A stretch of DNA of 64,000 nt from Trichoplax adhaerens. Its lineage: Eukaryota > Animalia > Placozoa. Below, piece after piece: positions 16,248 through 58,929 of this stretch (position 1 is the first letter of the stretch; every line of letters starts with the position of its first letter). The translations under genes were made by a program, and so were the position numbers. Location of the stretch: the NCBI RefSeq assembly GCF_000150275.1, contig NW_002060943.1:7246299-7310298 (forward strand). The letters are read 5' to 3'. A model generated the notes under the pieces. The model did not search any database. It was not told the origin of the DNA and was given only the letters and a program-made list of their open reading frames with translations.

Positions 16248-21336
<5,089 letters not shown>

Positions 21337-24666: not shown

Positions 24667-27600
24667 ATGGACCAATTTAAATTAATCCTTTTCAATCTTA
24701 TGTTAGGGCTAATTTGCCAACAAGCGATCGCTCATTGCATCCAGCCAACTCTTCCAACACAAGCCCATTCCCGACAGAGTTTTCCATTTCAACACCGGCA
24801 AGAAAGAGCTATAGTACGAGGTAATTATATATTGAATATGCAATCTATAAGTAATAAAAAAACTTCATCAATCCAATCGCATTTTCATGTCCTATTGGGT
24901 CTTTTTGTTAATCGCAATGAACTATCGGATCATATATGCTAGTTTAGTATTAAAAATGATTGGTCCATAAGTAAAAAACTCCATCAATCCAATCGCATTC
25001 TTATGCCTTATTGGGCCTTTTTAAATCCCAATCAGCTATCCAATTGTATGAAGTAGTTTAGTGTTAAAAATATAATAATTGATCGATATATTTGCTCAAG
25101 TTAGGATGGATCCATCTCCCCTTGTTTACTGCTCTTTATGGACAGTATTTATCCTGGCTAGAGTTGGTTTGAACTGAAATAGAATAGCCGTCAATTTTAT
25201 GTTGAGAAATTACAATATCAAGAGTTTTCCTTTCTACCCATTAGCTTATGTAGTAGCAATGATCACGTCTATCTTTATTTATTCAATCTTGACGACCATG
25301 AACAAGATGGATCGTTATTCCTTAGGGCAGTGCTTTGATTATTTTTCGTTCTACATACCAAAGCTATAGACTGCTACATGAATAGGACAGTCGATTGCTA
25401 ACAGATCGACGAAAAGATGGAGCTAATACCATTTTGGGGGCTTAGTATTCATTGACCATGATACAAACTTGGAAACAAATTAATAATATCCTATAGTTCA
25501 TCTTTTCCTATCATAGCCCACACGTTGCGACGACATTGGCTTGGGAATAAAGTTGAAAATGTCCGTTGATTCATCTTTTCCGATGGTGATGCACATATTA
25601 CAACAATATTCACTTGGAAATAACTTGAAATTGCCTTGACTTTCAACTTTTCCTATCATGAATTCAAAGTGTCCTAACGTTAATCTCTTCCTGTCATGAT
25701 TTGCATATTGTCCGGATATTAACTGGGGAATAAATTTATACTAACGTTAATCTTTTCCTGTCGTGATTTGCGTATTTGTCAGAATATAAACTTGGGAAAA
25801 AAATTGACACTAACATTAATCTTTTCCTATCATGATGCATATGTCGTGGCGACATACATTTAGGAATAAGTTCATAATGTCCTTACGTTTATCCTTTCCT
25901 GATCACGATATTGTGGTGATATCGATATTAACTTGGTAATCAAATCGAAAATGTTCTAACGTTAATCTTTTCAATCATCATGAGTGACGATATCGATATT
26001 AACTTGATAATCAATTCGAAAGTATCCTAGCGCTCTTCTTTTCCTGATCTCTATGTTATGACGATATCAAATTAACTTAGTAATCAATTCGAAAATGTCC
26101 TAAAATTCATTTTTTCTTGATCTCTATGTTGTGACCATATCGATAATAACTTGGTAATCAATCAGATAATGTCTTAAAGTTCCTATCATGATCCTAGACG
26201 TTGGACGATATCGGTATTAACTTGGTGATCAACTAGAAAATGTCCTAACGTTTATCTTTCCCTGATCTACGAGTATATATTGTGATGATATCGATCGTAA
26301 CTGGGAATCAATTAGAATTGCCCTAACGTTCATCTTTCCCAGATCTATATATTATGACGATATTAATATTAGCTTGGTAATCAACTACAAAATACCTTAA
26401 CGTCCATCTTTCCCCGATTTCTATATTACAATAATGTCAATTTAGTAATCAATTAGAAAATGTCCTAACGTTCATCTTTCCCTGATCTATATAGTGTGAT
26501 GATATCGATCGTAACTTGGGAATAAATTAGAAAATGTCCTAGCGTTCATCTTTCCCTGATCTATATGGTTTGACGATATCGATAGTAACTTGGTAATCAA
26601 TTATAAAGTGTCTTAACATTCACCTTTTCCTACTATGATCCATAGTTCCATACGTTGTGATGATATTGATAGTAACCTGGGAATAAATTAGAAAATGTAA
26701 TGTTGATCATGATCCCTATACACGTATTTGACGATATAGATAGTAACTTGAGATTGAATTGAAATTATTCTAACGTGAATCATTTCCTATCCTAACTCAT
26801 AAGTTAAAATGATATATTTAAGAACAAATACATGTCCTAACCTTTTCATAATGCTATTGAGGTAGGTGGAAGAGAATCATCGATAGCTTACACTGGTGGC
26901 CAAGCCAAAATCACCTGTAAAATTTTAAAATCCACTGATCGCGATCCTCCATCCAAGCCGGAATGTACTAATTTGTTCTGTCTCAATAAGCGTAAACTTT
27001 ACTTTTATTGCTCTAAAACAGAGCAATACAACTATAAGGATAATTGCTTAGCTTGCTGGAAATTTAATGGTAATCTATTGCCTGTAGAAGGACAAGATCA
27101 GTTTTCCTTCGGTTTGGAACAGAAATCGGATACAAATTCAGCTTATTATTATTTCAATCTGATTATTAAAAATGTCCATAAGGAGAATGAAGGAAATTAT
27201 TCGTGTTCACTAACGATGCTTGAATACGGATATAGTCATACAATGCAGGACCTAAGCACTCTTCAAGTCAAAGGTTACCTATTCAACTTGAATTATTAAC
27301 CAAATTAACGTTTAGATAGAAGTTTTAGTTTGCAATAAACGAAAAGTTCGTTTTTTCTTTCCAATCGTCCACTTTAAAATAGAAGAACAAACTGGCACTA
27401 TAAAACCTGATTTGTTATTTACAATTATATCTTTTAGATTCATGGATTCAATGCAGTAAGGAAAAAATGATGGAAGTACAGTATGATAACGATGGCAATC
27501 AAGCTAAGATTTATTGCAAAGCTTATGGAGCTCCACCTTTGCATTTCCAATTCCAATGGTATCGAATAACTGGAAGGAATAAGACAAAATTAAGTGGAAA

Positions 27601-30600
27601 TTATAATGCAAATCAAGGATCATCTATTATCAATGTACTACCAATCGATCGAAGAAAAGTAGAACAAACTGGAAAGATTATTTGTATTGCTCGAAATACT
27701 TTGATCAAGGATTCTCAATGTCAATATCAAGGCAATGTAAATCCACTAGATGATGCTAGTAAGTCAATTCAATCTTGATTAAGGTATAGATAGGGAAAGG
27801 AATAAAATAGCTAGAATATTCATTTACTGCACAAAATAAGAGTAGAATTCGTATGTCAGTGTGAGCCATATTGACCTACGCACTACCCGATTTTAGTAAA
27901 TTGATTCTATCTTGGTTAAAACATAGATAGGGAAAGGAATAGTTTAGCTGAAGTATTCCTTTGCTGCCTAAAATAAGAGTCAAATTCTCTATGCGAGTAT
28001 CAGTAATACTAATCTACAAAAAATGGCTTAAAAATCCAGTGATGTATCGACAAATAAATGAGTAGACTACATTAATCTGCGTCCTTATACGTATGTTGAT
28101 TACGGAATAGATACGAGATTTATTCTTGATTTATTCTAAAGTTACTGAACACATTCTGTATTTGGATATAGAAAGATTTTTCCCACGCCATTTCTTAGCT
28201 AAAATAAGTACTAGACCTTTCATGCTAAAATTATTGTCATAGATAATCAAAGATAGATCAATTTGGTTCCACGGTAAACTTATTTTTCCCTATATTACTT
28301 GCGATATTTCTACTATCAACTAGCTTGGATGGTCACGCTGATTAGTATTTTAGGATCTGGAACACTAACGTTATGTATTATCGGCGTATTGCTAAAAGTA
28401 ACACGAAATCAGACTATCACTGGGTTGGCCAGAACCTTAGTGACTATACTCAGTAGAGAAGGTAAGTCAAGGTTTATTAGCGCATAGCTTATAAAATTCA
28501 ATATTCTACTTTACTCGAATTATTAAAGATTCAATCTTTTTTCTATAACACTAAACTAAGATTTATTAGTTCATAGCTTATAAAACAATTCTAGATAGGC
28601 TTTATAATAAATTCAATATTCTCCTTTCTCGAACCATTACACCTGCTATTTTTAATCAATAATAACAAAGTCAAGATTAATCAGCTCATAGCTTATGAAA
28701 TAATTCTAGATAAGCTTTATAAAAATTCAATATTCTATCTTACTTATAAAATAATTGTAGATAGACCTTACAATAAATTGAATACTCTACCTAACTCGAA
28801 GTCAAGGTTTATTAGCTCATAGTTTATAAAATAATTCTAGATCGACTCTACTTGTATAAAAATTCGATATTCTTCTACCTTACTCGAACCATAAAAGATG
28901 CTATCTTATGTCATAATGACAAAATCAAGATTTATTAAATCATAGTTTATAAAATAATCCTAGATAGGCGTTGTAATAATTCAATATTCTATCTTACTCA
29001 AACCATAAAAGATGCTATCTTTTGTCATAATAATTAAGTCAAGGTTTATTAGCTCATAGCTTCTAAAATAACTATAGATAAGCTTTATAATAAATTCAAT
29101 ATTCTACCGCTCTCAAACTATAAAAGATTTTAACGTTTATCATAATAACGGTTATGCAACAGCTTGTATCTAGAGTAGTAGCCTCCGGATTTTCAATCAG
29201 TACTTACCCAGTCGTAACTTTCTCGCTATACTCTTCCGTTCATAAGCTTGCTTGGAATTACTATCATTTCTCTTATAAAATAGGATAGAGTAGCTCATAC
29301 GAGTAAGTTATAAAATATCATGTCATTAGTGTTATAATAAAGCCTTGAGCATATTGATAGTCAGTTCGTCGAAGAAAAATTATTTTATATAATAATTTTC
29401 GTCTTGATCTTCGGATATCTTATATATTAATGTATATTATTGCGTCTATCATGATAGTCTTGATAATTCAAACACAACCATTCTTAACTGAAGATATAGA
29501 AGAATTTCGTAAGGAAATTGGAGCAACTTATAAAGCCAGAGTCTTCTATATTGACAATACAACTGCATGGGCAGATATGAGAACAGTTGTGGCAAATTTA
29601 AAAAGATTTAAAGTTGTCATATGTATCATTAGTGAAAAAATACTGCATGAAGGTGTCAGTAACCTACAATTTAAAGATTTTTTATGTAAAATTATTACTA
29701 AATGTATAGAAAAAGAGAATGTGACCGGTATGCCGCCTATACTTATTCTTAAAAAGGAGGAATTTAATCATAGCCACTATCCCGATGACGTCGATCAATT
29801 AGAATGCATTGATATTCACTTAAAGGACGAGCAATTTCAGCAATTGCTAAAATCTCATTTAACGAATGAGCAAATTCAATGGCTAGAAGATCATTTTACT
29901 GATCAGCAATTCAAGCAACTGCTTAAAATATATTATAACGATCAATCATTTCAGCTATTGCGAGAAAATTGTTTAACCCATGAGCAATTTCTAATGTTAC
30001 TTGTAAGTCATTTAGACGATGACCAATATCAGCAATTACTAAAAACTCAATTAACTGGTGAGCAAATTCAATACCTAGAAGATCACTTAAATCAGCGGCA
30101 ATTACGACAATGGATTAAAAATTATTTCACAAATCAACAACTTCAAATATTACAAGAATCTCGTTTATCAACCGATCAAGAATTACAGCAATTGGTAGAA
30201 AACCAGTTAACTGATGATCTACTCCAATCATTCCTGCAAACTCGTTTAACAGATGAGCAAATTCAATGGTTAAAAGATCATTTAACTCCTCAGCAATTAA
30301 AGCAATTGCTTAAAAATTATTCCATCAATAGACAATTTCAGCCTTTGCTAATAGCTCTTTTAACCAATGAGCAATTGGAACTGCTGCTTCAAAGTCATTT
30401 AATCGATGATCAATTCCAACAATTACTCAAAAATAGCCTAACTAGTCAGCAAATTCAATGGCTAGAAAATCATTTAGCTGATCAGCAAAGCAAGCAATTT
30501 CAACAAGTACAAACAAATAGGTTAAGTACTGAACAATTTCGTCAGTTGACAGAGAGTCATTTAACCCATGATCAATATGAACAATTACTCGAAAGCTTTG

Positions 30601-30632
30601 CTCGATTTTACTATTACGATTGGAAGGATTGA
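24667..30632 (+). CDS. Ig-Ig-TM-TIR/SEFIR-like receptor, paralog 1 (with 260-aa helical repeat expansion)
   Basis: Five exons joined by phase-1 introns: 24667-24820 signal peptide MDQFKLILFNLMLGLICQQAIA; 26866-27273 Ig (AKITC...CWKFNG...FNLIIKNVHKENEGNYSC); 27438-27758 Ig (IYCKAYGAP..FQW..IICIARN); 28324-28461 TM (WMVTLISILGSGTLTLCIIGVLL); 29458-30632 alpha/beta TIR-like domain plus repeats. Confidence 0.8.
25430..26800. repeat. Minisatellite, ~18 x 72-80 bp, filling intron 1 of receptor paralog 1
   Basis: Consensus gacgatatcgatagtaacttggtaatcaattagaaaatgtcctaacgttcatctttccctgatctatat; gatatcgat recurs at ~25918, 25989, 26135, 26207, 26287, 26501 and 26575. Confidence 0.92.
28464..29150. repeat. 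Tandem array, ~6 x 90-130 bp, in intron 4 of paralog 1, starting at the splice donor
   Basis: aagtcaaggtttattagctcatagcttataaaataattctagata recurs at ~28464, 28553, 28668, 28799, 28922 and 29036. Confidence 0.88.
29817..30596 (+). repeat. Coding repeat: 20 units of 12-16 aa (xLTxEQFQQLLxx) with a 5-unit higher-order period
   Basis: Seen directly in ORF 29430..30632; the EQIQW/YL-type unit recurs at units 2, 7, 12 and 17. Confidence 0.93.
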
Positions 30633-34223: not shown

Positions 34224-37200
34224 ATGAATTACTACAGAATTCTAGCTGGATGGTTTATCCTCTTCATGAATAGTTCATTCATTCATACCGGTAAGAATAT
34301 CAATGATTGATCTATTCCTTAGCTTTATAATCTTGTGTTTAGAATTTTCAACTTTGATCTAACAACATGCCACACCCCTTGGAAAAGATTCGAATTGCCG
34401 ATCAACTATACCACCTTATGAACCGCTATCAGGTAACTTCTTGTGCTGAAGTTCGTTGTGATATCGATAATTAGAATGCCATTACAACTAGTGGATATCC
34501 GATATAATCACTTTACATTAGGTAAAACTAGGCTATTACGAATTATCTAATCATATTATCACTTGTTTGCAATCAGCTGGTATCTTTTACTATAGTTCGA
34601 TATATTGCTCGTAAAATAAAATGGCGTCCCGACTATGGTAGATATCTAAAGTAATCCTTCTACAATCGCCAAAAACAGATTATGACTAACATTAGATCAA
34701 TGTATTGACTACTATCAGTTTATACCTTGCACTCAGTATATAATGTTGATAAAATAAAATAGCATCACAGCTGACAGATATTCAAAGTAATCCTTCTACA
34801 GTAGTAAAGCTTGGGCTACTTAGGTTATCACTAGATTATTCCATTCTATGGATTGTTATCAGCTTGTATCTTCTACTATAGCTCAATAAATTGTAGAGTA
34901 AAATAAAAATTACATCACAGCTGGCAAATATGCAAAATAATCCTTCTATAATGACAAAACTAGGATTATTAATACTGTTACTAGATCATTCTATGGATTA
35001 CTAACAGCTTGTATCTTATACTATTGTTCAATAGAATATTGTGATAAAATAAAACAGCATTACAGCTGATAAGTATCCAAAGTATTCTTTCTATAAACGC
35101 AAAACTAGGGTTACTAATACTATCAGTAGATCATTCTATCGATTCCTATCAGCTTGTATCTTGTACTAATAGCTCAATAGATTGTGGAGTAAAATAAAAA
35201 TGGTATCACAACGGTCAAATATCCAAGTAATCATTAAACAATTCCTAATCATAAACTACTGCTGATAATAATTTAATCATTCTATCGACACCTAACAGCT
35301 TGTATCCTACATCCGTTATAGTCCGATATAATTTCCGTAAATTGAATTATATAACAGTTAGTTGATATCCGAAAGTAATCATCCTATAATAGCCAAAACG
35401 ACTAAGACTGTAACTAGACCTTTCATCAACTGCTGTCAGTTTGCATCCTACACTACTGGACTAGTACAGCGCAATAAAACGTCGATGGAGTAAAATGCCA
35501 TTATAGCTGATGGTTAATATGCTAAAGATCATCTTTAAGCAGAAATATGTTATATCGATCGTAATATAGTAGATAGATTGTCATTAGGGTTACCGATTGT
35601 AAAATTAATTCATTTTCCAGTAAAGGAATCATTACTTGAAATTAGTAAGAAATTAACTTCAACTATAAATTACTTAATCAATTGATAGCTATAGCACCAA
35701 TTTGATGACAATATAGACGATTATATTTCAATCTTGATTCTAATAGTGTACCGATATGATTCATGGAAGATGATATTAGATTGAAAAATGATTAAAGTTT
35801 CTATTGCCTCTGCAATTGGGAGAGTATGATAAATATCCTAATAACTTGCTATCGTTTCATGTATTTTCATTTAGATGAGCAAATATCAAAACTTAATAGC
35901 AGCATAAATCTGTTATCAGCACAAGCTTATGTTGGAGCTGATGGCTACATAAGATGTATAATAAAAATCGATCCAGAACCTACCAGCAATTGTAACAAAA
36001 AAAATGTAGCGAAGCAATGTAATATATGCCCAGAGGAACTGTGTCCTGGATGTCGAGATTCTCCAGATAAAACGTGCTGGGATTGCTGGTTTAGAAATGG
36101 TGAAAAATTACCGATGCAAGAGCCCAATAAATATGATTACGACATTTCTCAGAATCATCCCTCTGGTCAACACCTGTCTCAATACTATGAATTTCACCTT
36201 ATCATTAGAAATGTCACTGAAAAGGATGCTGGATATTACAATACTGAACTAAAAAGATTATGCGAATATGAAGGAAGTTTTTCAAATCATAGCACTAAAC
36301 TAACGATAAAAGGTGCCGTAATGACTAATATAATATCTATCTTTGATTTGTAGAATGATATTTGACTAGCTCTACAATTAAATATTCTGCTAATATGGAT
36401 ACAAATACGGATATCTCCAATATATTGGAGATATCGTCAGTATTTTTCAAATTGTTAATGTTAATCTTATAGCAGAACTTTTTCAAAGTGATAGAAATTT
36501 ATTTGAAAATTAATACGTGGAATAACTTATATTTTATCTCTGCGTCGAGAACCACAAATAGGATGATAAAAAATCGATAGCATCTGTTACAGGGGTATCA
36601 ACATCCGTTACTTTACGTTTACTAGTAGTTATAGAAGTCATGACATCCTGATGAGGAAAATTATGAAGTATCAGCAGATTTATTAGAGTGAAAAAAGATC
36701 AGATGATATGGTACTACGTTATCAGGATAGCAATAGGTACAAGCGTTTCTACATGCTGATGCACATAAGAATGTTCTACCCAGTATCTAGCTCTATTTCA
36801 AATAGATTAAAAATTATTTTCTATTTATTATATACTATGATCTAAGATATAGATATATAAATACCCTTTCTATATAGATTTGGTATGAGTATAAAATCAG
36901 GACCATACTAAGGATTACAGTTAAATATATATTCACTGTACATATATACATATATACTGCGAATGCAGAATACAGACAGAAGAGTACATAGTTGTAGCCT
37001 TTACATCTTTAGAAAGCATTGTGAGATCAAGTTAGGTATAAACACTTCTACATGTTTGTGTACATAAGAACATTTTACATAGCATCTAGCTGCATTTCAA
37101 ATAGACTAAAATTATTATCTTTTTATAATGTACAATGATATTAGATATAGAGTTGGTTAGAGCATAAAACTAGGATCATACTAAGAATTACAGTTAAATG

Positions 37201-39970
37201 TTTACTTAACAAAATCATAATTTAGAAATTTTGTATCTCATACTTATTGATAGTATATTATCCATATAGAATTTAACATTAATTAGAGTGATGATTAGCA
37301 AAGTACTAGGAAATTGATTGAGATAGATATAAAGATATTCCGTAGATAGTAAGAATTCAAGTAGAGTGAAGTGATTGATTACATATTTATTGATAGACTA
37401 CTATAGATATGTAGACATCAATGTAACAGGAACTTTGAGTTAGAATAATACAGAGCTAGAGTTAATAGGCTAATCTGGGCATACAATTTCAGATACAACA
37501 GAAATTTAGAGTCCGAATTATGGAAACTTATAGATAAATAATTCAGAATTCATATTTCATCCATACAAAATGTAGGATGGATAGCAATGATCCAAGAATC
37601 ATTCATTAGCATCATCTTTAGTAAAAGGACTCTATGAGAATTAGAAAGAGTAGAAAAGACTCCCTTTCAGATTTTCTGTCGATATCTACTAAATATCAAT
37701 TTGACTTTCCAATAATAAATTACTTCTTATTTCATATATAGAACCGTCATTTAATTGTCTTCAAAAAACAACTATGGAAGTACTAGATACAAAAGACGAA
37801 TATTACGTCGACATATTTTGCAGCGTAGAAGGAGCTCCGCACTCACATGTCCAATTTCTATGGTTTTCTGAACACGGAATTATTGCGACAGACTCAGAGG
37901 GTGAATGTAGTTATTCTAACGGATTGAACATAACTAGGAGATTGCGGATTAGTCGAAAGAGAGCAGAAAGGCTAAAAATGATTTATTGTAATGTTACCAA
38001 TTCTTTAATAAAGAACCGCTCATGCCTCTATGAGGCCTATATTAGTCCAATACCTGATTATAGTAAGCATACTTCATTTTAATAATAGAATAGCGGATAG
38101 AATAGATCTAATATAGGAGCTTACAATATTGCTATTCTTTACATAGTATCTTTTCTTAATTTTTTAGCTTGGAGTTTCATCGTGAGTATCATCTTAGGCT
38201 CCGCAATATTATCTGTCATCAGTGTTAGCATATATCTAAAAGCAACAGAAAATCGAAATCTAATATCTATGCTAGAGACCTATATCTATATAAAAAAAAC
38301 GAACGGTTAGTTAAGATTATAAAGGACATTTTATGAAGATTTATACGGATCTAATGTTATTTAGCACACTACACTTTTTGTCAATAATTTCGATAACCAT
38401 ATCTACTAATTAATAAAATATGCCAATAGAATGAAAGCTAGGATAAAGATATTTAGTAACTTTTATAAATGCTGAAGTTATACTCTTATAGGTTGCTCGT
38501 TATTATGTAAATAGCTTATACCAACAATATAGGATAAATAACAGCTTACGGATATTGATGTTGTAACCGCTATACCCACCTAATTTATTTTGCTTACCTC
38601 GATATTTGCGTTAATAGCGCCTGTACTATATCGTTATAAAGTACGCCATATCAAAACTAACTAATAGTAAAGGAAGCGAACTCTATTCTACGCAGATTAG
38701 AAAAAAATTACAATGGAAACTAGGATATAATTATATGTATTATATCGTTGTAAAATATACAGTAGTAGATCCTTCTAAAATAATCAAAAGGATCATAAAG
38801 GTACACTCTTTATAGATAGAACTGTAATTGAAATGAATTAAAATTATGAATTTAACATCGCATCATTACTTCAACGCTATATCTATATCAAAAATCACAA
38901 GAAATAAAATTGCAATGAATTCAAATTAGGGGTTACAAGAATTGAAAGTATACTTTACTTTAGTAAAATATTATCAATTGAAATTAGGTGTTTATGTCAC
39001 ACTGTTGGGATGTATAAATGCACAGTTTCTATATTATAAAGCTAAAGTAAATGAATTTTCTATTATGTTGTTGATGAAATTACAGAAAAAGGAGATTACA
39101 AATTTAAAATATAGCCATAAATCTAGATATTACACTATATGTGTTATATTTTTTCTAGAAGGAAGGGGAAGTTACATTAAAGTTTATCTTAAATCATTAG
39201 CTATTATTATGAATTAGTTTATGTTAAAGCATATCTTAAGCTATTCTTATAAATTTACGTTATTTCTATACTTCTAGATATTACATATGTTATTTTCTGC
39301 TTGATTTATATTAGAATATATCTTCAGTTATCAACTATTCTTACAAGGTTACATTATATCCATAGTTCTAGATAATATATATGGCTTTTTTTATTGGTCT
39401 GTATTAAATTATCAACTATTCTTATAAATTTACGTTATATTCATAGTTCTAGATACCATATGCACTGTATGTTTTTATTTATATTAGAATAAATCTTTAA
39501 CCATTAACTATTATTTTTTTATTGTCATAACAGTATTGTTGATACAATCACAACCATTCATAACAGAAGATATGGAAAAATTCTGCCAAGCGATTACTAC
39601 AAAACACAATGTCAACGTTCTTAGGGCCATCCCTACTCAGTGGATTGATATGAAAACCATTCGAGAAAGCTTGACAAGATTCAAAGTTATTATATGCGTC
39701 ATAAGTGAAGCAACTAAATCGAATACAGTACAAAAAAGATTTCAATTCAAGGATTGGGTTTGTAATATTATTAAAGGTTGTCTGGAAATAAGTAACGATG
39801 ATATACCGCCCCTATTTATAATCATGAATGATAAATTGAATCAAGATGAATATGAAGATGATATCAATACTTTGGAGTACATTACTTGCAACGATAAATT
39901 AACAGAAGAGCAAAGAGAACGACTAGAAGAAAGCTTTTCTCGATTTTATGACAAAGACTGGACGATTTAG
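34224..39970 (+). CDS. Ig-Ig-TM-TIR/SEFIR-like receptor, paralog 2 (compact cytoplasmic domain)
   Basis: Same five-exon phase-1 structure: 34224-34290 signal peptide MNYYRILAGWFILFMNSSFIHT (least certain); 35875-36312 Ig (YIRC...CWFRNG...FHLIIRNVTEKDAGYY); 37742-38062 Ig (IFCSVEGAP..FLW..IYCNVTN); 38168-38305 TM (WSFIVSIILGSAILSVISVSIYL); 39534-39970 TIR-like domain. Confidence 0.8.
34490..35530. repeat. Degenerate tandem array, ~7 x 135-150 bp, in intron 1 of paralog 2
   Basis: aaagtaatccttcta...atcagcttgtatctt...aaaataaaat recurs at ~34648, 34784, 34934, 35078, 35225 and 35372. Confidence 0.85.
36730..37200. repeat. Two-copy ~300 bp-period duplication in intron 2 of paralog 2
   Basis: taggta.aa.c.ttctacatg...cataagaa...atctagct..atttcaaataga...catactaag.attacagttaaat at ~36734 and ~37033. 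Confidence 0.75.
39215..39510. repeat. Tandem array, 3-4 x ~85-95 bp, just before the TIR exon of paralog 2
   Basis: ctattcttataaatttacgttat...ttctagata recurs at ~39241, 39335 and 39415. Confidence 0.75.
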
Positions 39971-51900: not shown

Positions 51901-54900
51901 TTAATGCTAAGCACTGTGTTTAAGGTTCCTACTATTCTCAACCGGCATAGAAGCTAATAAATAGTACAAGTTGTCAATATTAATGTATAGCTAGCTATCT
52001 ACTGACCTCCATTTCCTTTATTACTTGAAAAACGGGTCTTTTATACTTAGGCTCTCCACAATTGCAATATATAGTATGTCTAAGAATTATTAGGTTGAAT
52101 AGTATCGGATTAGTGATGAGGTAGAATTAAGAAGTGCAACGAAGCCCCAAAATTACTTAACCCTGATTTTAGTAAAAACGTAGATCTTAATACTGATCTA
52201 TTATTTAAGTCACAAAACTTAATCAATAAATAGTTTAGTTTAAGGTGCATACGTATTCCAACAATTACAGTATATGAGAAGTAAAGGAATGTTCATGAGC
52301 GAGAACTTCCGATGGTAGACAGAAATTCAAGATTTAGTTACGCGATCTAATTGTATTGTCACTAAACAGTATGAACCGCAGAATTTTGATGATAAAGATA
52401 ACATGATAGAAGATAAAAAATTTATTAGTATTTCTTGAAAATAATAATATAAAGTTACTTCTTACGCCGATATAAATATAAATTTATTGTTCTGGGCCAT
52501 AAATTACGCAGTGGTTTTCCCTTCTGCCTCGTGTACATTCTTATTTCGGTATGTTCATAGTTTAAAATTGAATCTATTTTGATAAAATTTGCTTTTAAAA
52601 CTAGTATGCAAATTATACATACCTCTAAAAGAGCATGTCGAATATGCTAATTTTATAACCAGCCCTAAAGTGTAACGTGGATAGAGGACTTTTAGCCACA
52701 TTACTGGCTTTTGGATTTGGGTTTGAAGGTGTTAGTAAGGTAGGCATAAATTAAAATTTTGAATGATTTCAGTGTGGATAGTTGAATAAAATTGTTAATT
52801 GTAATGTGTTATAACAATCATTATAACAATTTCAAGAACGGATTAATTAAATATATCATCTTATTAAGGATGAAATTGATACAGTTTTGAAAATGGGGGC
52901 GGCACCTGAAAAAATTATTTTTGCGAATCCGTGCAAGCCAATTTCTCATATAAAGTATGTTTTAATAAAATATCATCTTGCAAAGACTTGATCAGTAAGC
53001 AGGACAAAGTGGACAGATGTCCAATATGTATGTACGCTGCACTCGGTACCTACCATTTTATTTGCTGGATTACTAATTCTTGTGCTTGTTAATAGCAAAT
53101 CCTGTGACTTTTCATAAATGTGAGTTTATGAAAGGCGAATGCGGCTGGAAACAATTACGAGCTGTTGACTTTACCGACTGGGAACGTGGTAAGTATATCA
53201 GTTTTATTACTCTACAATTTTTAATTTGCAGCTATGTCGTTGCCAAAATTTTAATCGAAAATTTTGTCCAATAAATCAAATTAAATACTCTAATCAGGAT
53301 TGCAAGAATAGCGCAAATTCCAGTTTACTATTGGGAATTTAGCTATAACTTCAATATCATAACCTGATTTCTTGTTCAATGCATATTTTCGTCTACTTTT
53401 AAAAGATGCTAAAATAGGAATGGTTCTCAATTCCAAATATGAGAACATTAATGGCCAATATGCGAATATGATTAGTCCCCCGATGGTGAAATCTCATGAA
53501 GCAAAATCAATTAGGGTATTCAGACATTAATGTAACGGACATTTCCTCTTAGTTGTTACCGAAATTCGAAATTGAATTACATAAAGCTGGGTAGACAATT
53601 ACCAGAAAACTTTAATCCATTCTATTTAGCGATCACCAGCATTAGAGATAGATATTTCGTACGATGTAATCAAATAATGTGATAGTCAATAACAAATCGA
53701 TAGACGAAGTAACATAAGCTTCATGCTTTCCATCATCAGGTGCAAATCTCATTTGGATACAATGGTTCATACACCGGAAATTTATACGTTATGGTCATGT
53801 ATCCGAAGTACAGTGATAAATTAAAAGTAATCGATACAATCAACCCACAGTCGGCTTTACTTGGACCACTTACTATTACACGTTATCAAATATTCTTTTC
53901 TCCTCTATATACTGATTATCAGGTATATCTTAATATTTTATTTTGGATATTTATGATATTGCAATATGATGTCAAAATTGCTTGATAGTAATTATTTACA
54001 TGGTTATACCTTGCGAGTAAGCACCTTAAATTCTAATTGTTTCAATCAAAGTATAATGACTAAAATCACAATCAGTTATGCAATATATTAATGTAATGAA
54101 ATGAAATATGTAGAGATCAAGCTACAAAACTTTAACAAACTTTCATTCTACTTTCGTAGCACTCCGGTCGACTTAACGCTAATACTTTGACACCAAATAA
54201 AATTTGGAGAAATAACCGAACAACAATTTATTTCAAAACAAAAATGGAGAGAAGTATAAACCGAACAACCGCACAAATACTTAGCTTTAAGTATTATTAA
54301 AATAAATGACAGACTTAAAAACTGTCAACGACCAAACAACCTTTCAAAAACAAGAACGTTTTAACTTACGACAATTCGACCCCGAAGGCCTTTTAAATTC
54401 AACAAGTTCTTCAAATAAAATCTTCTCCTACTCTCTCTCTAAATTTTCTAATTGCACTATCATTTATAGGCTCCGTAGAGCCGTCAGAGGTATTAAAACT
54501 AAACATTTGCTAACCAATCGCTCTAAGATCCGTTNNNNNNNNNNNNNNNNNNNNNNNNNNNNNNNNNNNNNNNNNNNNNNNNNNGAAATAATTTCAATGT
54601 TGGATATCGGTGTGGATTTCCCGGCCAAGCAAATTCACTTTTTGAGAAAGTATGAGAATCTAGATTAACGAACATAACTGAATAAAATAAGGAACATTAA
54701 AAATATTCCATTCTTCTAATGCTTATTTTAGGTATGTAGCAATATTAGCGGCGCTTTAGATAAAGACTTTCCAATAAAAGATAATATACACATTTTGGCA
54801 GAGCCTGGTGAGATTTACTTTTATAAAAATTGTTTTAATCTCGACATGATCTCATCTGGCAATCAATTTCCATCATAAATACAGGATCTAAGAATGACAG

Positions 54901-57903: not shown

Positions 57904-58387
57904 NNNNNNNNNNNNNNNNNNNNNNNNNNNNNNNNNNNNNNNNNNNNNNNNNNNNNNNNNNNNNNNNNNNNNNNNNNNNNNNNNNNNNNNNNNNNNNNNN
58001 NNNNNNNNNNNNNNNNNNNNNNNNNNNNNNNNNNNNNNNNNNNNNNNNNNNNNNNNNNNNNNNNNNNNNNNNNNNNNNNNNNNNNNNNNNNNNNNNNNNN
58101 NNNNNNNNNNNNNNNNNNNNNNNNNNNNNNNNNNNNNNNNNNNNNNNNNNNNNNNNNNNNNNNNNNNNNNNNNNNNNNNNNNNNNNNNNNNNNNNNNNNN
58201 NNNNNNNNNNNNNNNNNNNNNNNNNNNNNNNNNNNNNNNNNNNNNNNNNNNNNNNNNNNNNNNNNNNNNNNNNNNNNNNNNNNNNNNNNNNNNNNNNNNN
58301 NNNNNNNNNNNNNNNNNNNNNNNNNNNNNNNNNNNNNNNNNNNNNNNNNNNNNNNNNNNNNNNNNNNNNNNNNNNNNNNNNNNNNNN
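57904..58387. other. Assembly gap (~484 N)
   Basis: Run of N. Confidence 1.
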
Positions 58388-58929
58388 ACTTATAGACAAT
58401 TGCAAAGGGCGTAATTAGTGAAAGTTAAATGTTGAAAGAACGATTACTTGGCAATCTTATTTATACTGAAGCGATGAAGATGAAACTCTTGACTTGATGA
58501 CGTGGTTGTACAACTGGGAGCAGTTGCATTTATTCAAACCAGTTGAACTAATGAATGTCAACACCAATATCTACCAATTCATTATTATATTGTAGCTATA
58601 TCGTAACGTCAAAGTTACCAAGGTGGTTGATACCTTATAGTATATAGGGAATTCTCTCTTTACTTTCACAGACTTCTTTTCCTTAAACAGTCCCCGATTA
58701 CACAGCTTAATTGACTAGGGCATCAGCTTTGCAAGAATAGTACTGTAGATATGGTGTATGATTTTACTCACACACAAGTTACTGTATCTACTACAAAAGT
58801 AACTTATTACTTTAATCAGATATACTGTACGTGTGTGTAAAACTCAAGTACTACTGTGATGCACTATCTAATTTTATTTTCAAGTATTGCAGTAAAACGG
58901 AAGATTGATCCATGTAGGTACCTGCTACA

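What the first reader, a model, noticed from the sequence alone, without database searches (positions are those of the whole stretch)
26916..27059. Ultralong Cys-rich 'knob' inserted in the BC (CDR1-equivalent) loop of Ig domain 1, hypervariable between paralogs
Seen: the B-strand Cys to C-strand Trp distance is 46 aa in paralog 1 (KILKSTDRDPPSKPECTNLFCLNKRKLYFYCSKTEQYNYKDNCLAC, 5 Cys) and 43 aa in paralog 2 (35955-36089, IIKIDPEPTSNCNKKNVAKQCNICPEELCPGCRDSPDKTCWDC, 7 Cys). Only an early D.P.P-like stalk, the first Cys and a terminal CxxCW are shared. Known: typical Ig domains have ~11-15 residues here, and a protruding disulfide-patterned mini-domain on an Ig loop is the design of bovine ultralong CDR-H3. 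Inference: a germline-encoded variable disulfide knob acting as the ligand-specificity module at the receptor tip, convergent with knob antibodies.
Basis: partly seen in the sequence, partly recalled or inferred. Interest (0 to 1): 0.88.

Follow-up and report, generated by a model that had tools for sequence, protein, structure and literature searches.

The report
Cysteine-rich loop in placozoan Ig receptors
Two neighbouring Trichoplax genes for small membrane receptors carry a real 43-46-residue cysteine-rich enlargement of one loop at the tip of their outer antibody-like domain. It looks like an inherited four-cysteine module that changes no faster than the rest of the domain, not a hypervariable 'knob' like that of cattle antibodies.

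Summary
In two tandem Trichoplax adhaerens genes (signal peptide, Ig1, Ig2, TM, cytoplasmic alpha/beta domain) the Ig1 exon has 46 residues (5 Cys) or 43 residues (7 Cys) between the B-strand Cys and the C-strand Trp. The same span is 11-13 in their own Ig2 domains, 18-21 in seven cousin loci on another scaffold, and 8-13 in unrelated Ig domains.

The stretch is very probably coding. It is open in frame in both genes, enriched in Cys, single-copy, kept in gene model TRIADDRAFT_52090, and conserved at protein level in two ENA-derived relatives.

Four Cys columns align across the long-loop relatives. Identity inside the insert (25-57%) equals that of the framework (30-55%). Only two such genes exist in the genome. 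AlphaFold gives an Ig core but no confident fold for the insert, and no known domain matches it.

It is best read as an old, disulfide-stapled expansion of an already Cys-bearing BC loop in a small placozoan-specific receptor family that is losing the canonical Ig disulfide. A ligand-contact role at the membrane-distal tip is plausible but untested.

A scan note on another piece of this genome (s1-733982) already described a similar Ig receptor with a TIR-like tail.

The parts
24667..24820 (+). Paralog 1, exon 1: start codon, signal peptide, short N-terminal peptide with one Cys; phase-1 donor (g|gtaatt)
   Evidence: Read by eye; no RNA support was obtainable.
26866..27273 (+). Paralog 1, exon 2: Ig1 domain (408 nt, phase 1-1)
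   Evidence: sub-threshold Ig_3, ig, V-set and I-set hits on the C'-F part; AF2 Ig core; Ig folds, Z about 8.
26919..27056 (+). Paralog 1 BC-loop expansion: 46 residues, 5 Cys (the finding)
   Evidence: single copy in the genome; no Pfam match; AF2 pLDDT below 50.
27438..27758 (+). Paralog 1, exon 3: linker Cys plus Ig2 domain (321 nt, phase 1-1; B-Cys to Trp span 13)
28324..28461 (+). Paralog 1, exon 4: transmembrane segment plus basic stop-transfer (138 nt, phase 1-1)
   Evidence: same length and phases as the paralog 2 exon.
29458..30632 (+). Paralog 1, exon 5: cytoplasmic alpha/beta domain (TIR-like by lead only), about 250 residues of helical repeats, and a conserved C-terminal motif
34224..34290 (+). 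Paralog 2, exon 1: signal peptide (phase-1 donor g|gtaaga)
   Evidence: matches the start of gene model TRIADDRAFT_52090.
35875..36312 (+). Paralog 2, exon 2: Ig1 domain (438 nt, phase 1-1); the F-strand Cys is absent
35958..36086 (+). Paralog 2 BC-loop expansion: 43 residues, 7 Cys including three CxxC
   Evidence: single copy; no Pfam match; retained as coding in TRIADDRAFT_52090.
37742..38062 (+). Paralog 2, exon 3: linker Cys plus Ig2 (321 nt, phase 1-1)
38168..38305 (+). Paralog 2, exon 4: transmembrane segment (138 nt, phase 1-1)
39534..39970 (+). Paralog 2, exon 5: cytoplasmic alpha/beta domain, no repeat expansion, same C-terminal motif

Best explanation
The stretch is a translated expansion of the B-C loop of the membrane-distal Ig-like domain. 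It sits in two tandemly duplicated Trichoplax adhaerens genes that encode type I membrane proteins: signal peptide, Ig1, Ig2, TM, and a cytoplasmic alpha/beta domain that may be a very divergent TIR.

The genes belong to a small family that I found only in placozoan-like sequence, about nine loci in this genome. In this family the BC loop already carries Cys and is already long (18-21 residues in the sister cluster). The canonical B-F disulfide is being lost: it is absent in all cousins, and the F-strand Cys is absent in paralog 2.

In the long-loop branch the loop grew to 43-46 residues around four conserved Cys, probably once, before the P1/P2 duplication. Paralog 1 then added one Cys and the fast-evolving paralog 2 added three.

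Most likely mechanism (inferred): the Cys form two or more disulfides. These staple the loop into a compact excrescence at the N-terminal, membrane-distal end of Ig1. There it would stabilise a domain with a weakened core disulfide and form part of the surface that meets a ligand or partner.

Shown: position, length, coding character, Cys conservation, family context, and a rate of change equal to the framework. Inferred: disulfide bonding, a folded structure, a role in binding, and signalling through the tail.
For: Coding:
- Uninterrupted frame in both paralogs, with Cys enrichment.
- The NCBI/UniRef gene model TRIADDRAFT_52090 keeps the paralog 2 insert.
- ENA-derived relatives P0006, P0011 and P0013 are open through the same region. 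They share the motif before the Trp and three to four Cys columns.
- P0006 and P0013 are as alike in the insert (57%) as in the framework (55%), which intron sequence would not be.
- No GT..AG pair that keeps the frame is shared by the paralogs. The candidates have poor acceptors and would delete the B-strand Cys.

Loop assignment:
- AF2 strands and Ig structural matches.
- B-strand motif conserved with the cousins. hhalign of the window group against the cousins gives probability 91%, E = 9e-7, starting exactly at the Cys-Trp / Cys-Phe of strand C.

Family:
- Two clusters, found with Ig1 and cytoplasmic-domain profiles.
- A framework-only tree separates the long-loop group from the cousins (support 99/98) and joins P1 with P2 (89/81), with P2 on a long branch.

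Topology:
- Signal peptides, TM exons, and identical exon phases and lengths in both paralogs.

Cys parity (my count):
- The ectodomains hold 12 and 14 Cys, so all could be paired. The Ig1 exons hold odd numbers (7 and 9).
Against:
- AF2 gives no confident structure for the insert (pLDDT below 50), so it could be flexible or disordered.
- Nothing here tests disulfide pairing or any binding role.
- Only five sequences bear the long loop. Two are truncated ORF fragments of unknown organism, so the rate comparison has low power. With Cys columns excluded, the insert is somewhat, but not significantly, less conserved than the framework.
- The 'TIR-like' tail rests on a language-model lead and a generic flavodoxin-like model. 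Pfam TIR, TIR_2 and profile-profile tests are negative.
Confidence: 0.6

Rival explanations
1. One reading: a germline-encoded, hypervariable disulfide 'knob' that sets ligand specificity at the receptor tip, convergent with bovine ultralong CDR-H3.
For: - Long Cys-rich excursion on a loop at the CDR end of a membrane-distal Ig domain.
- Cys number and loop length differ between paralogs: 5 vs 7 Cys and 46 vs 43 residues, with two indels.
- Residues between the Cys are slightly less conserved than the framework: about 16% vs 30% for P1-P2 once Cys columns are removed (my count; not significant).
Against: - Identity in the insert equals that of the framework in all three informative pairs.
- Four Cys columns are conserved.
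- Only two long-loop genes exist in the genome, so there is no repertoire.
- Paralog 2 is fast-evolving over the whole domain, not just the loop.
- No stalk or knob is predicted.
- The loop is BC, not FG.
Confidence: 0.15
2. A purely structural role: the extra disulfides only compensate for the decaying canonical B-F disulfide of this family's Ig1, and the loop does not contact any ligand.
For: - All five cousins lack both canonical Cys, yet keep Cys in the BC loop, before strand E and in the FG region.
- Paralog 2 lacks the F-strand Cys and has the most loop Cys.
Against: - Paralog 1 and both ENA relatives (P0006, P0013) keep the F-strand Cys, and paralog 1 also keeps the B-strand Cys (the ENA fragments are truncated before the B strand). 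Yet they have the long loop.
- 25 extra residues are more than cross-linking needs.
Confidence: 0.15
3. Mis-assigned strand: the true B strand is the hydrophobic stretch ending at the third loop Cys, 16 residues before the Trp. The upstream part would then be an N-terminal extension, so there is no BC insertion.
For: The Cys-to-Trp distance from that Cys would be a normal 16 residues. AF2 confidence in this region is low.
Against: - The upstream stretch fits the Ig B-strand pattern (G..a.I.C). It aligns with the cousins' B strand, which lies 18-21 residues before strand C with nothing in between.
- AF2 makes residues 14-21 a strand at pLDDT about 75.
- Ig structures align from model residue 6.
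Confidence: 0.07
4. The stretch is not part of the mature mRNA: it is a retained or cryptic intron, or these are decaying genes.
For: - No RNA evidence could be obtained.
- Paralog 1 is unannotated.
- Both paralogs have a GT at the B-strand Cys codon and in-frame AG sites downstream.
- The cousin cluster contains pseudogenes.
Against: - Open frame, Cys enrichment and protein-level conservation in ENA relatives.
- The candidate introns are 102-135 nt with poor acceptors. They would remove the B-strand Cys and are not at matching positions.
- All exons of both genes are intact, with matching phases.
Confidence: 0.03

Closest known systems
Cousin cluster in the same genome (G000:C1413, about 3.809-3.858 Mb, minus strand): at least 7 loci of Ig1-Ig2-TM-cytoplasmic domain
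   Same: - Same exon order and same cytoplasmic domain (profile hits E = 1e-44 to 1e-62).
- Ig1 is homologous from strand C onward (hhalign 91%).
- The BC loop bears Cys, and a Cys directly precedes the strand-C aromatic.
   Different: - BC span is 18-21 residues, not 43-46.
- Both canonical Ig Cys are replaced (Phe in strands B and F), and Trp is replaced by Phe in strand C.
- Extra Cys lie before strand E and in the FG region.
- Several copies carry stop codons.
Bovine ultralong CDR-H3 'stalk and knob' antibodies (from general knowledge)
   Same: A long, Cys-rich, probably disulfide-bonded excursion from a loop at the CDR end of an Ig V-like domain.
   Different: - It sits in the FG loop (CDR3), not the BC loop.
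- It is made by V-D-J joining of a long D segment and diversified somatically, including its Cys pattern.
- It has a beta-ribbon stalk.
- Here the loop is germline-encoded, has four conserved Cys, evolves at the framework rate, has no predicted stalk, and occurs in two genes only.
IL-1 receptor / SIGIRR family and the invertebrate Ig-TIR receptors of sponges and cnidarians (from general knowledge; Kamm et al. 2019, PMC6321704, reported no transmembrane TIR receptor in Trichoplax sp. H2)
   Same: - Type I membrane protein with N-terminal Ig domains and a cytoplasmic alpha/beta domain of about 130 residues.
- Language-model neighbours of the tail are TIR_2/SEFIR clusters (0.91-0.93).
- An IL-1RAcP cluster is among the neighbours of the paralog 2 Ig1 (0.93).
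   Different: - No Pfam TIR, TIR_2 or SEFIR match for any of six family tails.
- hhalign against two Trichoplax TIR exons gives 0.3%.
- In the fold search a plant TIR reaches Z = 6.0 at rank 13, among generic flavodoxin-like folds.
- I know of no long BC insert in IL-1R domains.
Non-canonical CDR1-CDR3 disulfides of shark IgNAR and camelid VHH (from general knowledge)
   Same: Extra Cys in the CDR1-equivalent (BC) loop of a single Ig V-like domain, used to brace the binding loops.
   Different: Those use one or two Cys in loops of normal or moderately long length, within somatically diversified antigen receptors. Here a 43-46-residue loop holds 5-7 Cys in a germline receptor.

Membership tests
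Immunoglobulin-like domain (I-set / V-set) | Match to a curated Ig profile above its gathering score | tested here: not met
   Best Pfam hits are Ig_3 at 20.6 bits (cut-off 30) for paralog 1 and V-set at 17.8 bits (cut-off 26) for paralog 2. They cover only strands C'-F.
Immunoglobulin-like domain (I-set / V-set) | B-strand Cys, C-strand Trp, and the F-strand D.G.Y.C motif | tested here: met
   Paralog 1 has all three. Paralog 2 has the B Cys and the Trp but lacks the F Cys. The cousins lack both Cys.
Immunoglobulin-like domain (I-set / V-set) | Beta-sandwich fold that superposes on solved Ig domains | tested here: met
   The AF2 core has pLDDT 63-77. All 50 top matches are Ig domains with Z 7.6-8.3, 72-90 residues aligned and rmsd 1.6-3.3. 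Z about 8 is only middling on that tool's scale.
Ultralong CDR-H3 stalk-knob design | Insert lies in the FG (CDR3) loop on a two-stranded stalk | tested here: not met
   The insert lies between strands B and C. No paired strands are predicted in it; there is only a low-confidence helix at residues 37-42.
Ultralong CDR-H3 stalk-knob design | Knob sequence and Cys pattern far more variable than the framework | tested here: not met
   Insert vs framework identity is 25 vs 30%, 31 vs 35% and 57 vs 55%. Four Cys columns are conserved.
Ultralong CDR-H3 stalk-knob design | Folded disulfide-bonded mini-domain that alone contacts the ligand | not testable with these tools
   AF2 pLDDT is below 50 in the insert. 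Testing this needs disulfide mapping, a structure and binding assays.
IL-1R / Ig-TIR receptors | Cytoplasmic TIR domain recognisable by profile | tested here: not met
   No TIR, TIR_2 or SEFIR hit at E <= 10 for six tails. The Pfam TIR and TIR_2 models find other Trichoplax exons but not these. hhalign gives 0.3%.
IL-1R / Ig-TIR receptors | TIR-type (flavodoxin-like) fold of the tail | tested here: inconclusive
   The AF2 model has pLDDT 57 with alternating beta/alpha elements. The best matches are generic flavodoxin-like folds (Z up to 7.3), with a plant TIR at Z 6.0. Atlas neighbours are TIR_2/SEFIR at 0.91-0.93 but share fewer than 170 features.
Known Cys-rich modules (EGF, knottin, zinc ribbon and others) | Profile match of the insert | tested here: not met
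   Searching the two inserts alone against Pfam at E <= 10 gave nothing for paralog 2 and one irrelevant 13-bit hit for paralog 1. There was no PDB sequence match.

The most novel reading that the evidence does not exclude
The long-loop pair and its cousin cluster are a placozoan-specific family of Ig receptors with a cryptic TIR-type tail. The family evolves by birth and death. In it, disulfide-patterned loops of Ig1 (BC in the window pair; BC, pre-E and FG in the cousins) replace the canonical Ig disulfide and act as the recognition surface. This would be an early, independent experiment in building germline recognition modules on Ig loops, in an animal with no described Ig-based immune receptor.
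Probability: 0.15. Interest if true: 0.7.

Novelty: new variant of a known kind. Interest (0 to 1): 0.35.

Why it matters
If the loop is a folded, disulfide-stapled contact surface, it shows that large structured insertions on the CDR1-equivalent loop of an Ig domain arose in one of the earliest-branching animal lineages. It would also give a handle on an unannotated receptor family. Paralog 1 has no gene model, and the paralog 2 model stops after Ig1. A 2019 survey of placozoan immunity (PMC6321704) did not list the family.

As it stands, the loop is a curiosity of domain evolution rather than a diversity-generating device: two genes, a conserved Cys scaffold and no excess variability.

Tried and rejected

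Source DNA of the ENA relatives:
The organism, the upstream half of the insert and the codon-level comparison for P0006 and P0013 are therefore unknown. The listing of cluster members gave only 'ENA', with contigs of 751-1963 bp.

More relatives:
- phmmer over 1.84 billion representatives found only P0006 beyond generic multi-Ig noise, and no self hit.
- Three homologous-protein searches gave only P0012, P0006 and P0013.
- The JGI metagenome scan found nothing.

Known domain for the insert:
- Pfam was negative, as were PDB sequences.

Structure:
- AF2 of the paralog 1 Ig1 gave a usable core but an unmodelled insert.

TIR membership:
- Pfam, PDB profile search, hhalign and fold search were negative or generic.

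Repeat or transposon origin of the insert:
- Rejected; both inserts are single-copy.

Zinc binding by the three CxxC of paralog 2:
- Considered and set aside. The motif set is absent in paralog 1 and the relatives, and the domain is extracellular.

Literature:
- No paper mentions TRIADDRAFT_52090 or such a loop.

Spliced model:
- All searches were exon by exon, by reference.
Full report
WHERE THIS IS

The window is G000:C1414:7246299-7310298 of a 105.6-Mb, 1414-contig, 32% GC genome. A protein encoded in the window is the NCBI/UniRef entry 'uncharacterized protein TRIADDRAFT_52090 [Trichoplax adhaerens]', on a 13.26-Mb contig. The organism is therefore the placozoan Trichoplax adhaerens.

THE OBSERVATION

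- In paralog 1 the residues between the B-strand Cys and the C-strand Trp number 46, with 5 Cys (nt 26919-27056).
- In paralog 2 they number 43, with 7 Cys (nt 35958-36086).

Three controls show how unusual this is:

- The Ig2 domains of the same family have 11-13 residues over the same span.
- The Ig1 domains of five cousin genes have 18-21.
- 40 of 41 Ig domains in the unrelated multi-Ig proteins returned have 8-13 (a crude motif-based count that takes the nearest Cys before the Trp).

Chance does not explain it:

- Only 1.8% of 138-nt windows of nearby non-coding DNA are open in a given frame.
- The Cys counts exceed the composition expectation (p = 0.008 and 0.00015) and the rest of the exon (Fisher p = 0.04 and 0.005).

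THE GENES

I built both gene models by eye from the sequence.

- Each gene has five exons, all joined in phase 1: signal peptide, Ig1, Ig2 with a linker Cys, a transmembrane exon, and a cytoplasmic exon.
- The Ig2 exons are both 321 nt and the TM exons both 138 nt. The Ig1 exons are 408 and 438 nt.
- Symmetric phase-1 exons are the classic layout of Ig-superfamily genes (general knowledge).
- The matching lengths and phases in two paralogs that share only about 30% protein identity argue that the models are right.

They remain unconfirmed by RNA:

- Paralog 1 is absent from the 1.84-billion-protein library (no self hit).
- The public model of paralog 2 holds only the signal-peptide exon plus Ig1, read through its donor to a stop.

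IS THE INSERT CODING, AND IS IT IN THE BC LOOP?

Four things argue for coding.

1. The frame is open, and the public model TRIADDRAFT_52090 translates the insert.
2. Three ORF fragments from ENA assemblies (P0006, P0011, P0013) are relatives of the window pair. They are open through the second half, or more, of the loop. They share the eight-residue motif around the Trp with paralog 1, and their Cys align with those of both window paralogs. P0006 and P0013 are 57% identical in the loop and 55% in the framework. An intron would not keep that.
3. I enumerated every in-frame, stop-free GT..AG pair. None sits at equivalent positions in the two paralogs. The best candidates start inside the B-strand Cys codon, are 102-135 nt long, and end at acceptors unlike the eight real ones of these genes.
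4. The insert DNA is single-copy, so it is not a mobile element.

On placement:

- AlphaFold2, with a four-sequence alignment, gives an Ig core at pLDDT 63-77. It has strands at residues 14-21 (holding the B Cys) and 63-67 (holding the Trp), and leaves residues 24-59 below pLDDT 50.
- A Foldseek-independent search of 48,161 PDB chains returns only I-set and V-set Ig domains (Z 7.6-8.3). They align 72-90 residues across model range 6-136, so they bridge the insert.
- The cousins' B strand aligns motif-for-motif with the strand I call B, and lies 18-21 residues before strand C with nothing else between.
- I therefore accept a BC-loop location. I give about 7% to the rival that the hydrophobic stretch 16 residues before the Trp is the true B strand.

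THE FAMILY

Only two long-loop Ig1 exons exist in the genome. Weak hits led me to a second cluster at C1413:3.809-3.858 Mb, minus strand.

- Profiles of its Ig1 and of the shared cytoplasmic domain find about eight Ig1 pieces and six or seven tails there. Several carry stop codons. Nothing convincing is found elsewhere.
- hhalign links the two Ig1 groups (91%, E = 9e-7). The alignment begins at the Cys-Trp of the window pair opposite the Cys-Phe of the cousins.
- In the cousins both canonical Ig Cys are replaced by Phe. Conserved Cys sit instead in the BC loop (1-4), just before strand E, and in the FG region.
- Paralog 2 of the window has also lost the F-strand Cys.
- A tree built on the framework only (strand C to G) separates the four long-loop sequences from the five cousins (99/98) and joins P1 with P2 (89/81). 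P2 sits on a branch 3.5 times longer than P1's.

The simplest history is this. An ancestral, already Cys-bearing BC loop expanded once, around four Cys. After the T. adhaerens duplication P2 evolved fast over the whole domain, gaining three loop Cys (hence its three CxxC) and losing the F-strand Cys.

IS IT HYPERVARIABLE?

No, as far as five sequences can tell. Identity in aligned loop positions against the framework is:

- 9/36 vs 21/69 (P1-P2)
- 11/36 vs 25/72 (P1-P0013)
- 12/21 vs 48/87 (P0006-P0013)

Fisher p is 0.65, 0.83 and 1.0. Leaving out the Cys columns, the loop is somewhat less conserved in the two distant pairs (about 16% vs 30% and 22% vs 34%, my count), but not significantly so. 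This pattern of a fixed Cys scaffold with looser inter-Cys residues is ordinary for disulfide-rich modules.

IS IT A KNOWN DOMAIN OR A FOLDED KNOB?

- Pfam finds nothing in either insert, and PDB sequences give nothing.
- AF2 offers only a low-confidence helix. Neither a stalk nor a knob is predicted.
- With such a shallow alignment, this is absence of evidence only.
- Cys parity fits full disulfide bonding. The two ectodomains hold 12 and 14 Cys. The Ig1 exons hold odd numbers (7 and 9), so at least one bond should leave the Ig1 exon (my count; inference).

THE TAIL

The cytoplasmic domain is shared by all family members.

- It has no Pfam TIR or SEFIR match.
- There is no significant PDB sequence match.
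- hhalign against two bona fide Trichoplax TIR exons gives 0.3%.
- AF2 gives a low-confidence alternating beta/alpha model. Its matches are generic flavodoxin-like folds, with a plant TIR at Z 6.0 among them.
- The language-model search puts TIR_2 and SEFIR clusters nearest (0.91-0.93), but with fewer shared features than true family members usually show.

I call it 'TIR-like by lead only'.

An earlier scan note on another piece of this genome (s1-733982) reached a similar view of what is probably a cousin gene, and reported that gene as spliced and real. I did not verify that. Kamm et al. 2019 (PMC6321704) reported no TM protein with a TIR domain in Trichoplax sp. H2, so the family seems to have escaped annotation-based surveys.

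VERDICT

The feature is real and unusual in size, but its reading as a hypervariable specificity knob is not supported. It is best filed as a new variant of a known kind: an Ig-like domain with a large, conserved, Cys-stapled BC-loop expansion, in a small lineage-restricted receptor family.

Its position at the membrane-distal tip makes a role in partner contact plausible. I put the combined 'stapled tip module that stabilises and contributes to binding' at 0.6. The strong knob hypothesis gets 0.15, a purely structural role 0.15, strand mis-assignment 0.07 and non-coding 0.03. Interest is 0.35.

LIMITS

- There is no RNA evidence, no DNA for the ENA relatives, and no orthologues from other named placozoans.
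- Only one of the two Ig1 exons was modelled.
- The spliced proteins were never joined or searched whole.

Noticed in passing
G000:C1413:3809000-3858200, minus strand (loci L003-L008): A tandem cluster of at least 7 related loci (Ig1-Ig2-TM-cytoplasmic domain). Their Ig1 lacks both canonical Cys and carries conserved Cys in the BC, pre-E and FG regions. Several copies have in-frame stops, so they are probably pseudogenes. This looks like birth-and-death evolution.
   Followed up: partly
window 24667-30632 and 34224-39970: Paralog 1 has no gene model in the protein libraries (no self hit). The public model of paralog 2 (TRIADDRAFT_52090, 181 aa) stops after Ig1 because it reads through the exon 2 donor at 36312/36313. 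Both genes need re-annotation.
   Followed up: partly
window 29817-30596: The paralog 1 tail holds about 250 residues of Q/L-rich helical repeats. They lie between the alpha/beta domain and a short C-terminal motif (F-x-R-F-Y..D-W) that paralog 2 has directly after its domain. The repeat block is therefore an insertion specific to paralog 1.
   Followed up: no
window 25876-26631, 28489-29149, 34750-35232: Minisatellites lie inside the introns of both genes: 74 bp x 10, 114 bp x 5 and 145 bp x 3.3.
   Followed up: no
window 36230-36260 (paralog 2 F strand): Paralog 2 has lost the F-strand Cys of the canonical Ig disulfide while keeping the B-strand Cys. That Cys must therefore pair elsewhere, possibly inside the loop.
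   Followed up: no
proteins P0006 / P0011: Two ENA fragments of one 90% cluster differ by a single residue (E/K), and it lies inside the loop. This is an anecdote only.
   Followed up: no
window 19490-21212: ORF pieces resembling a dyskerin/Cbf5-type PUA region, followed by a long Lys/Arg-rich tail exon (20928-21212). I recognised this by eye only.
   Followed up: no
window about 54540-54590 and 57910-58390: Runs of N (assembly gaps or withheld stretches) are visible as X runs in the ORF list.
   Followed up: no
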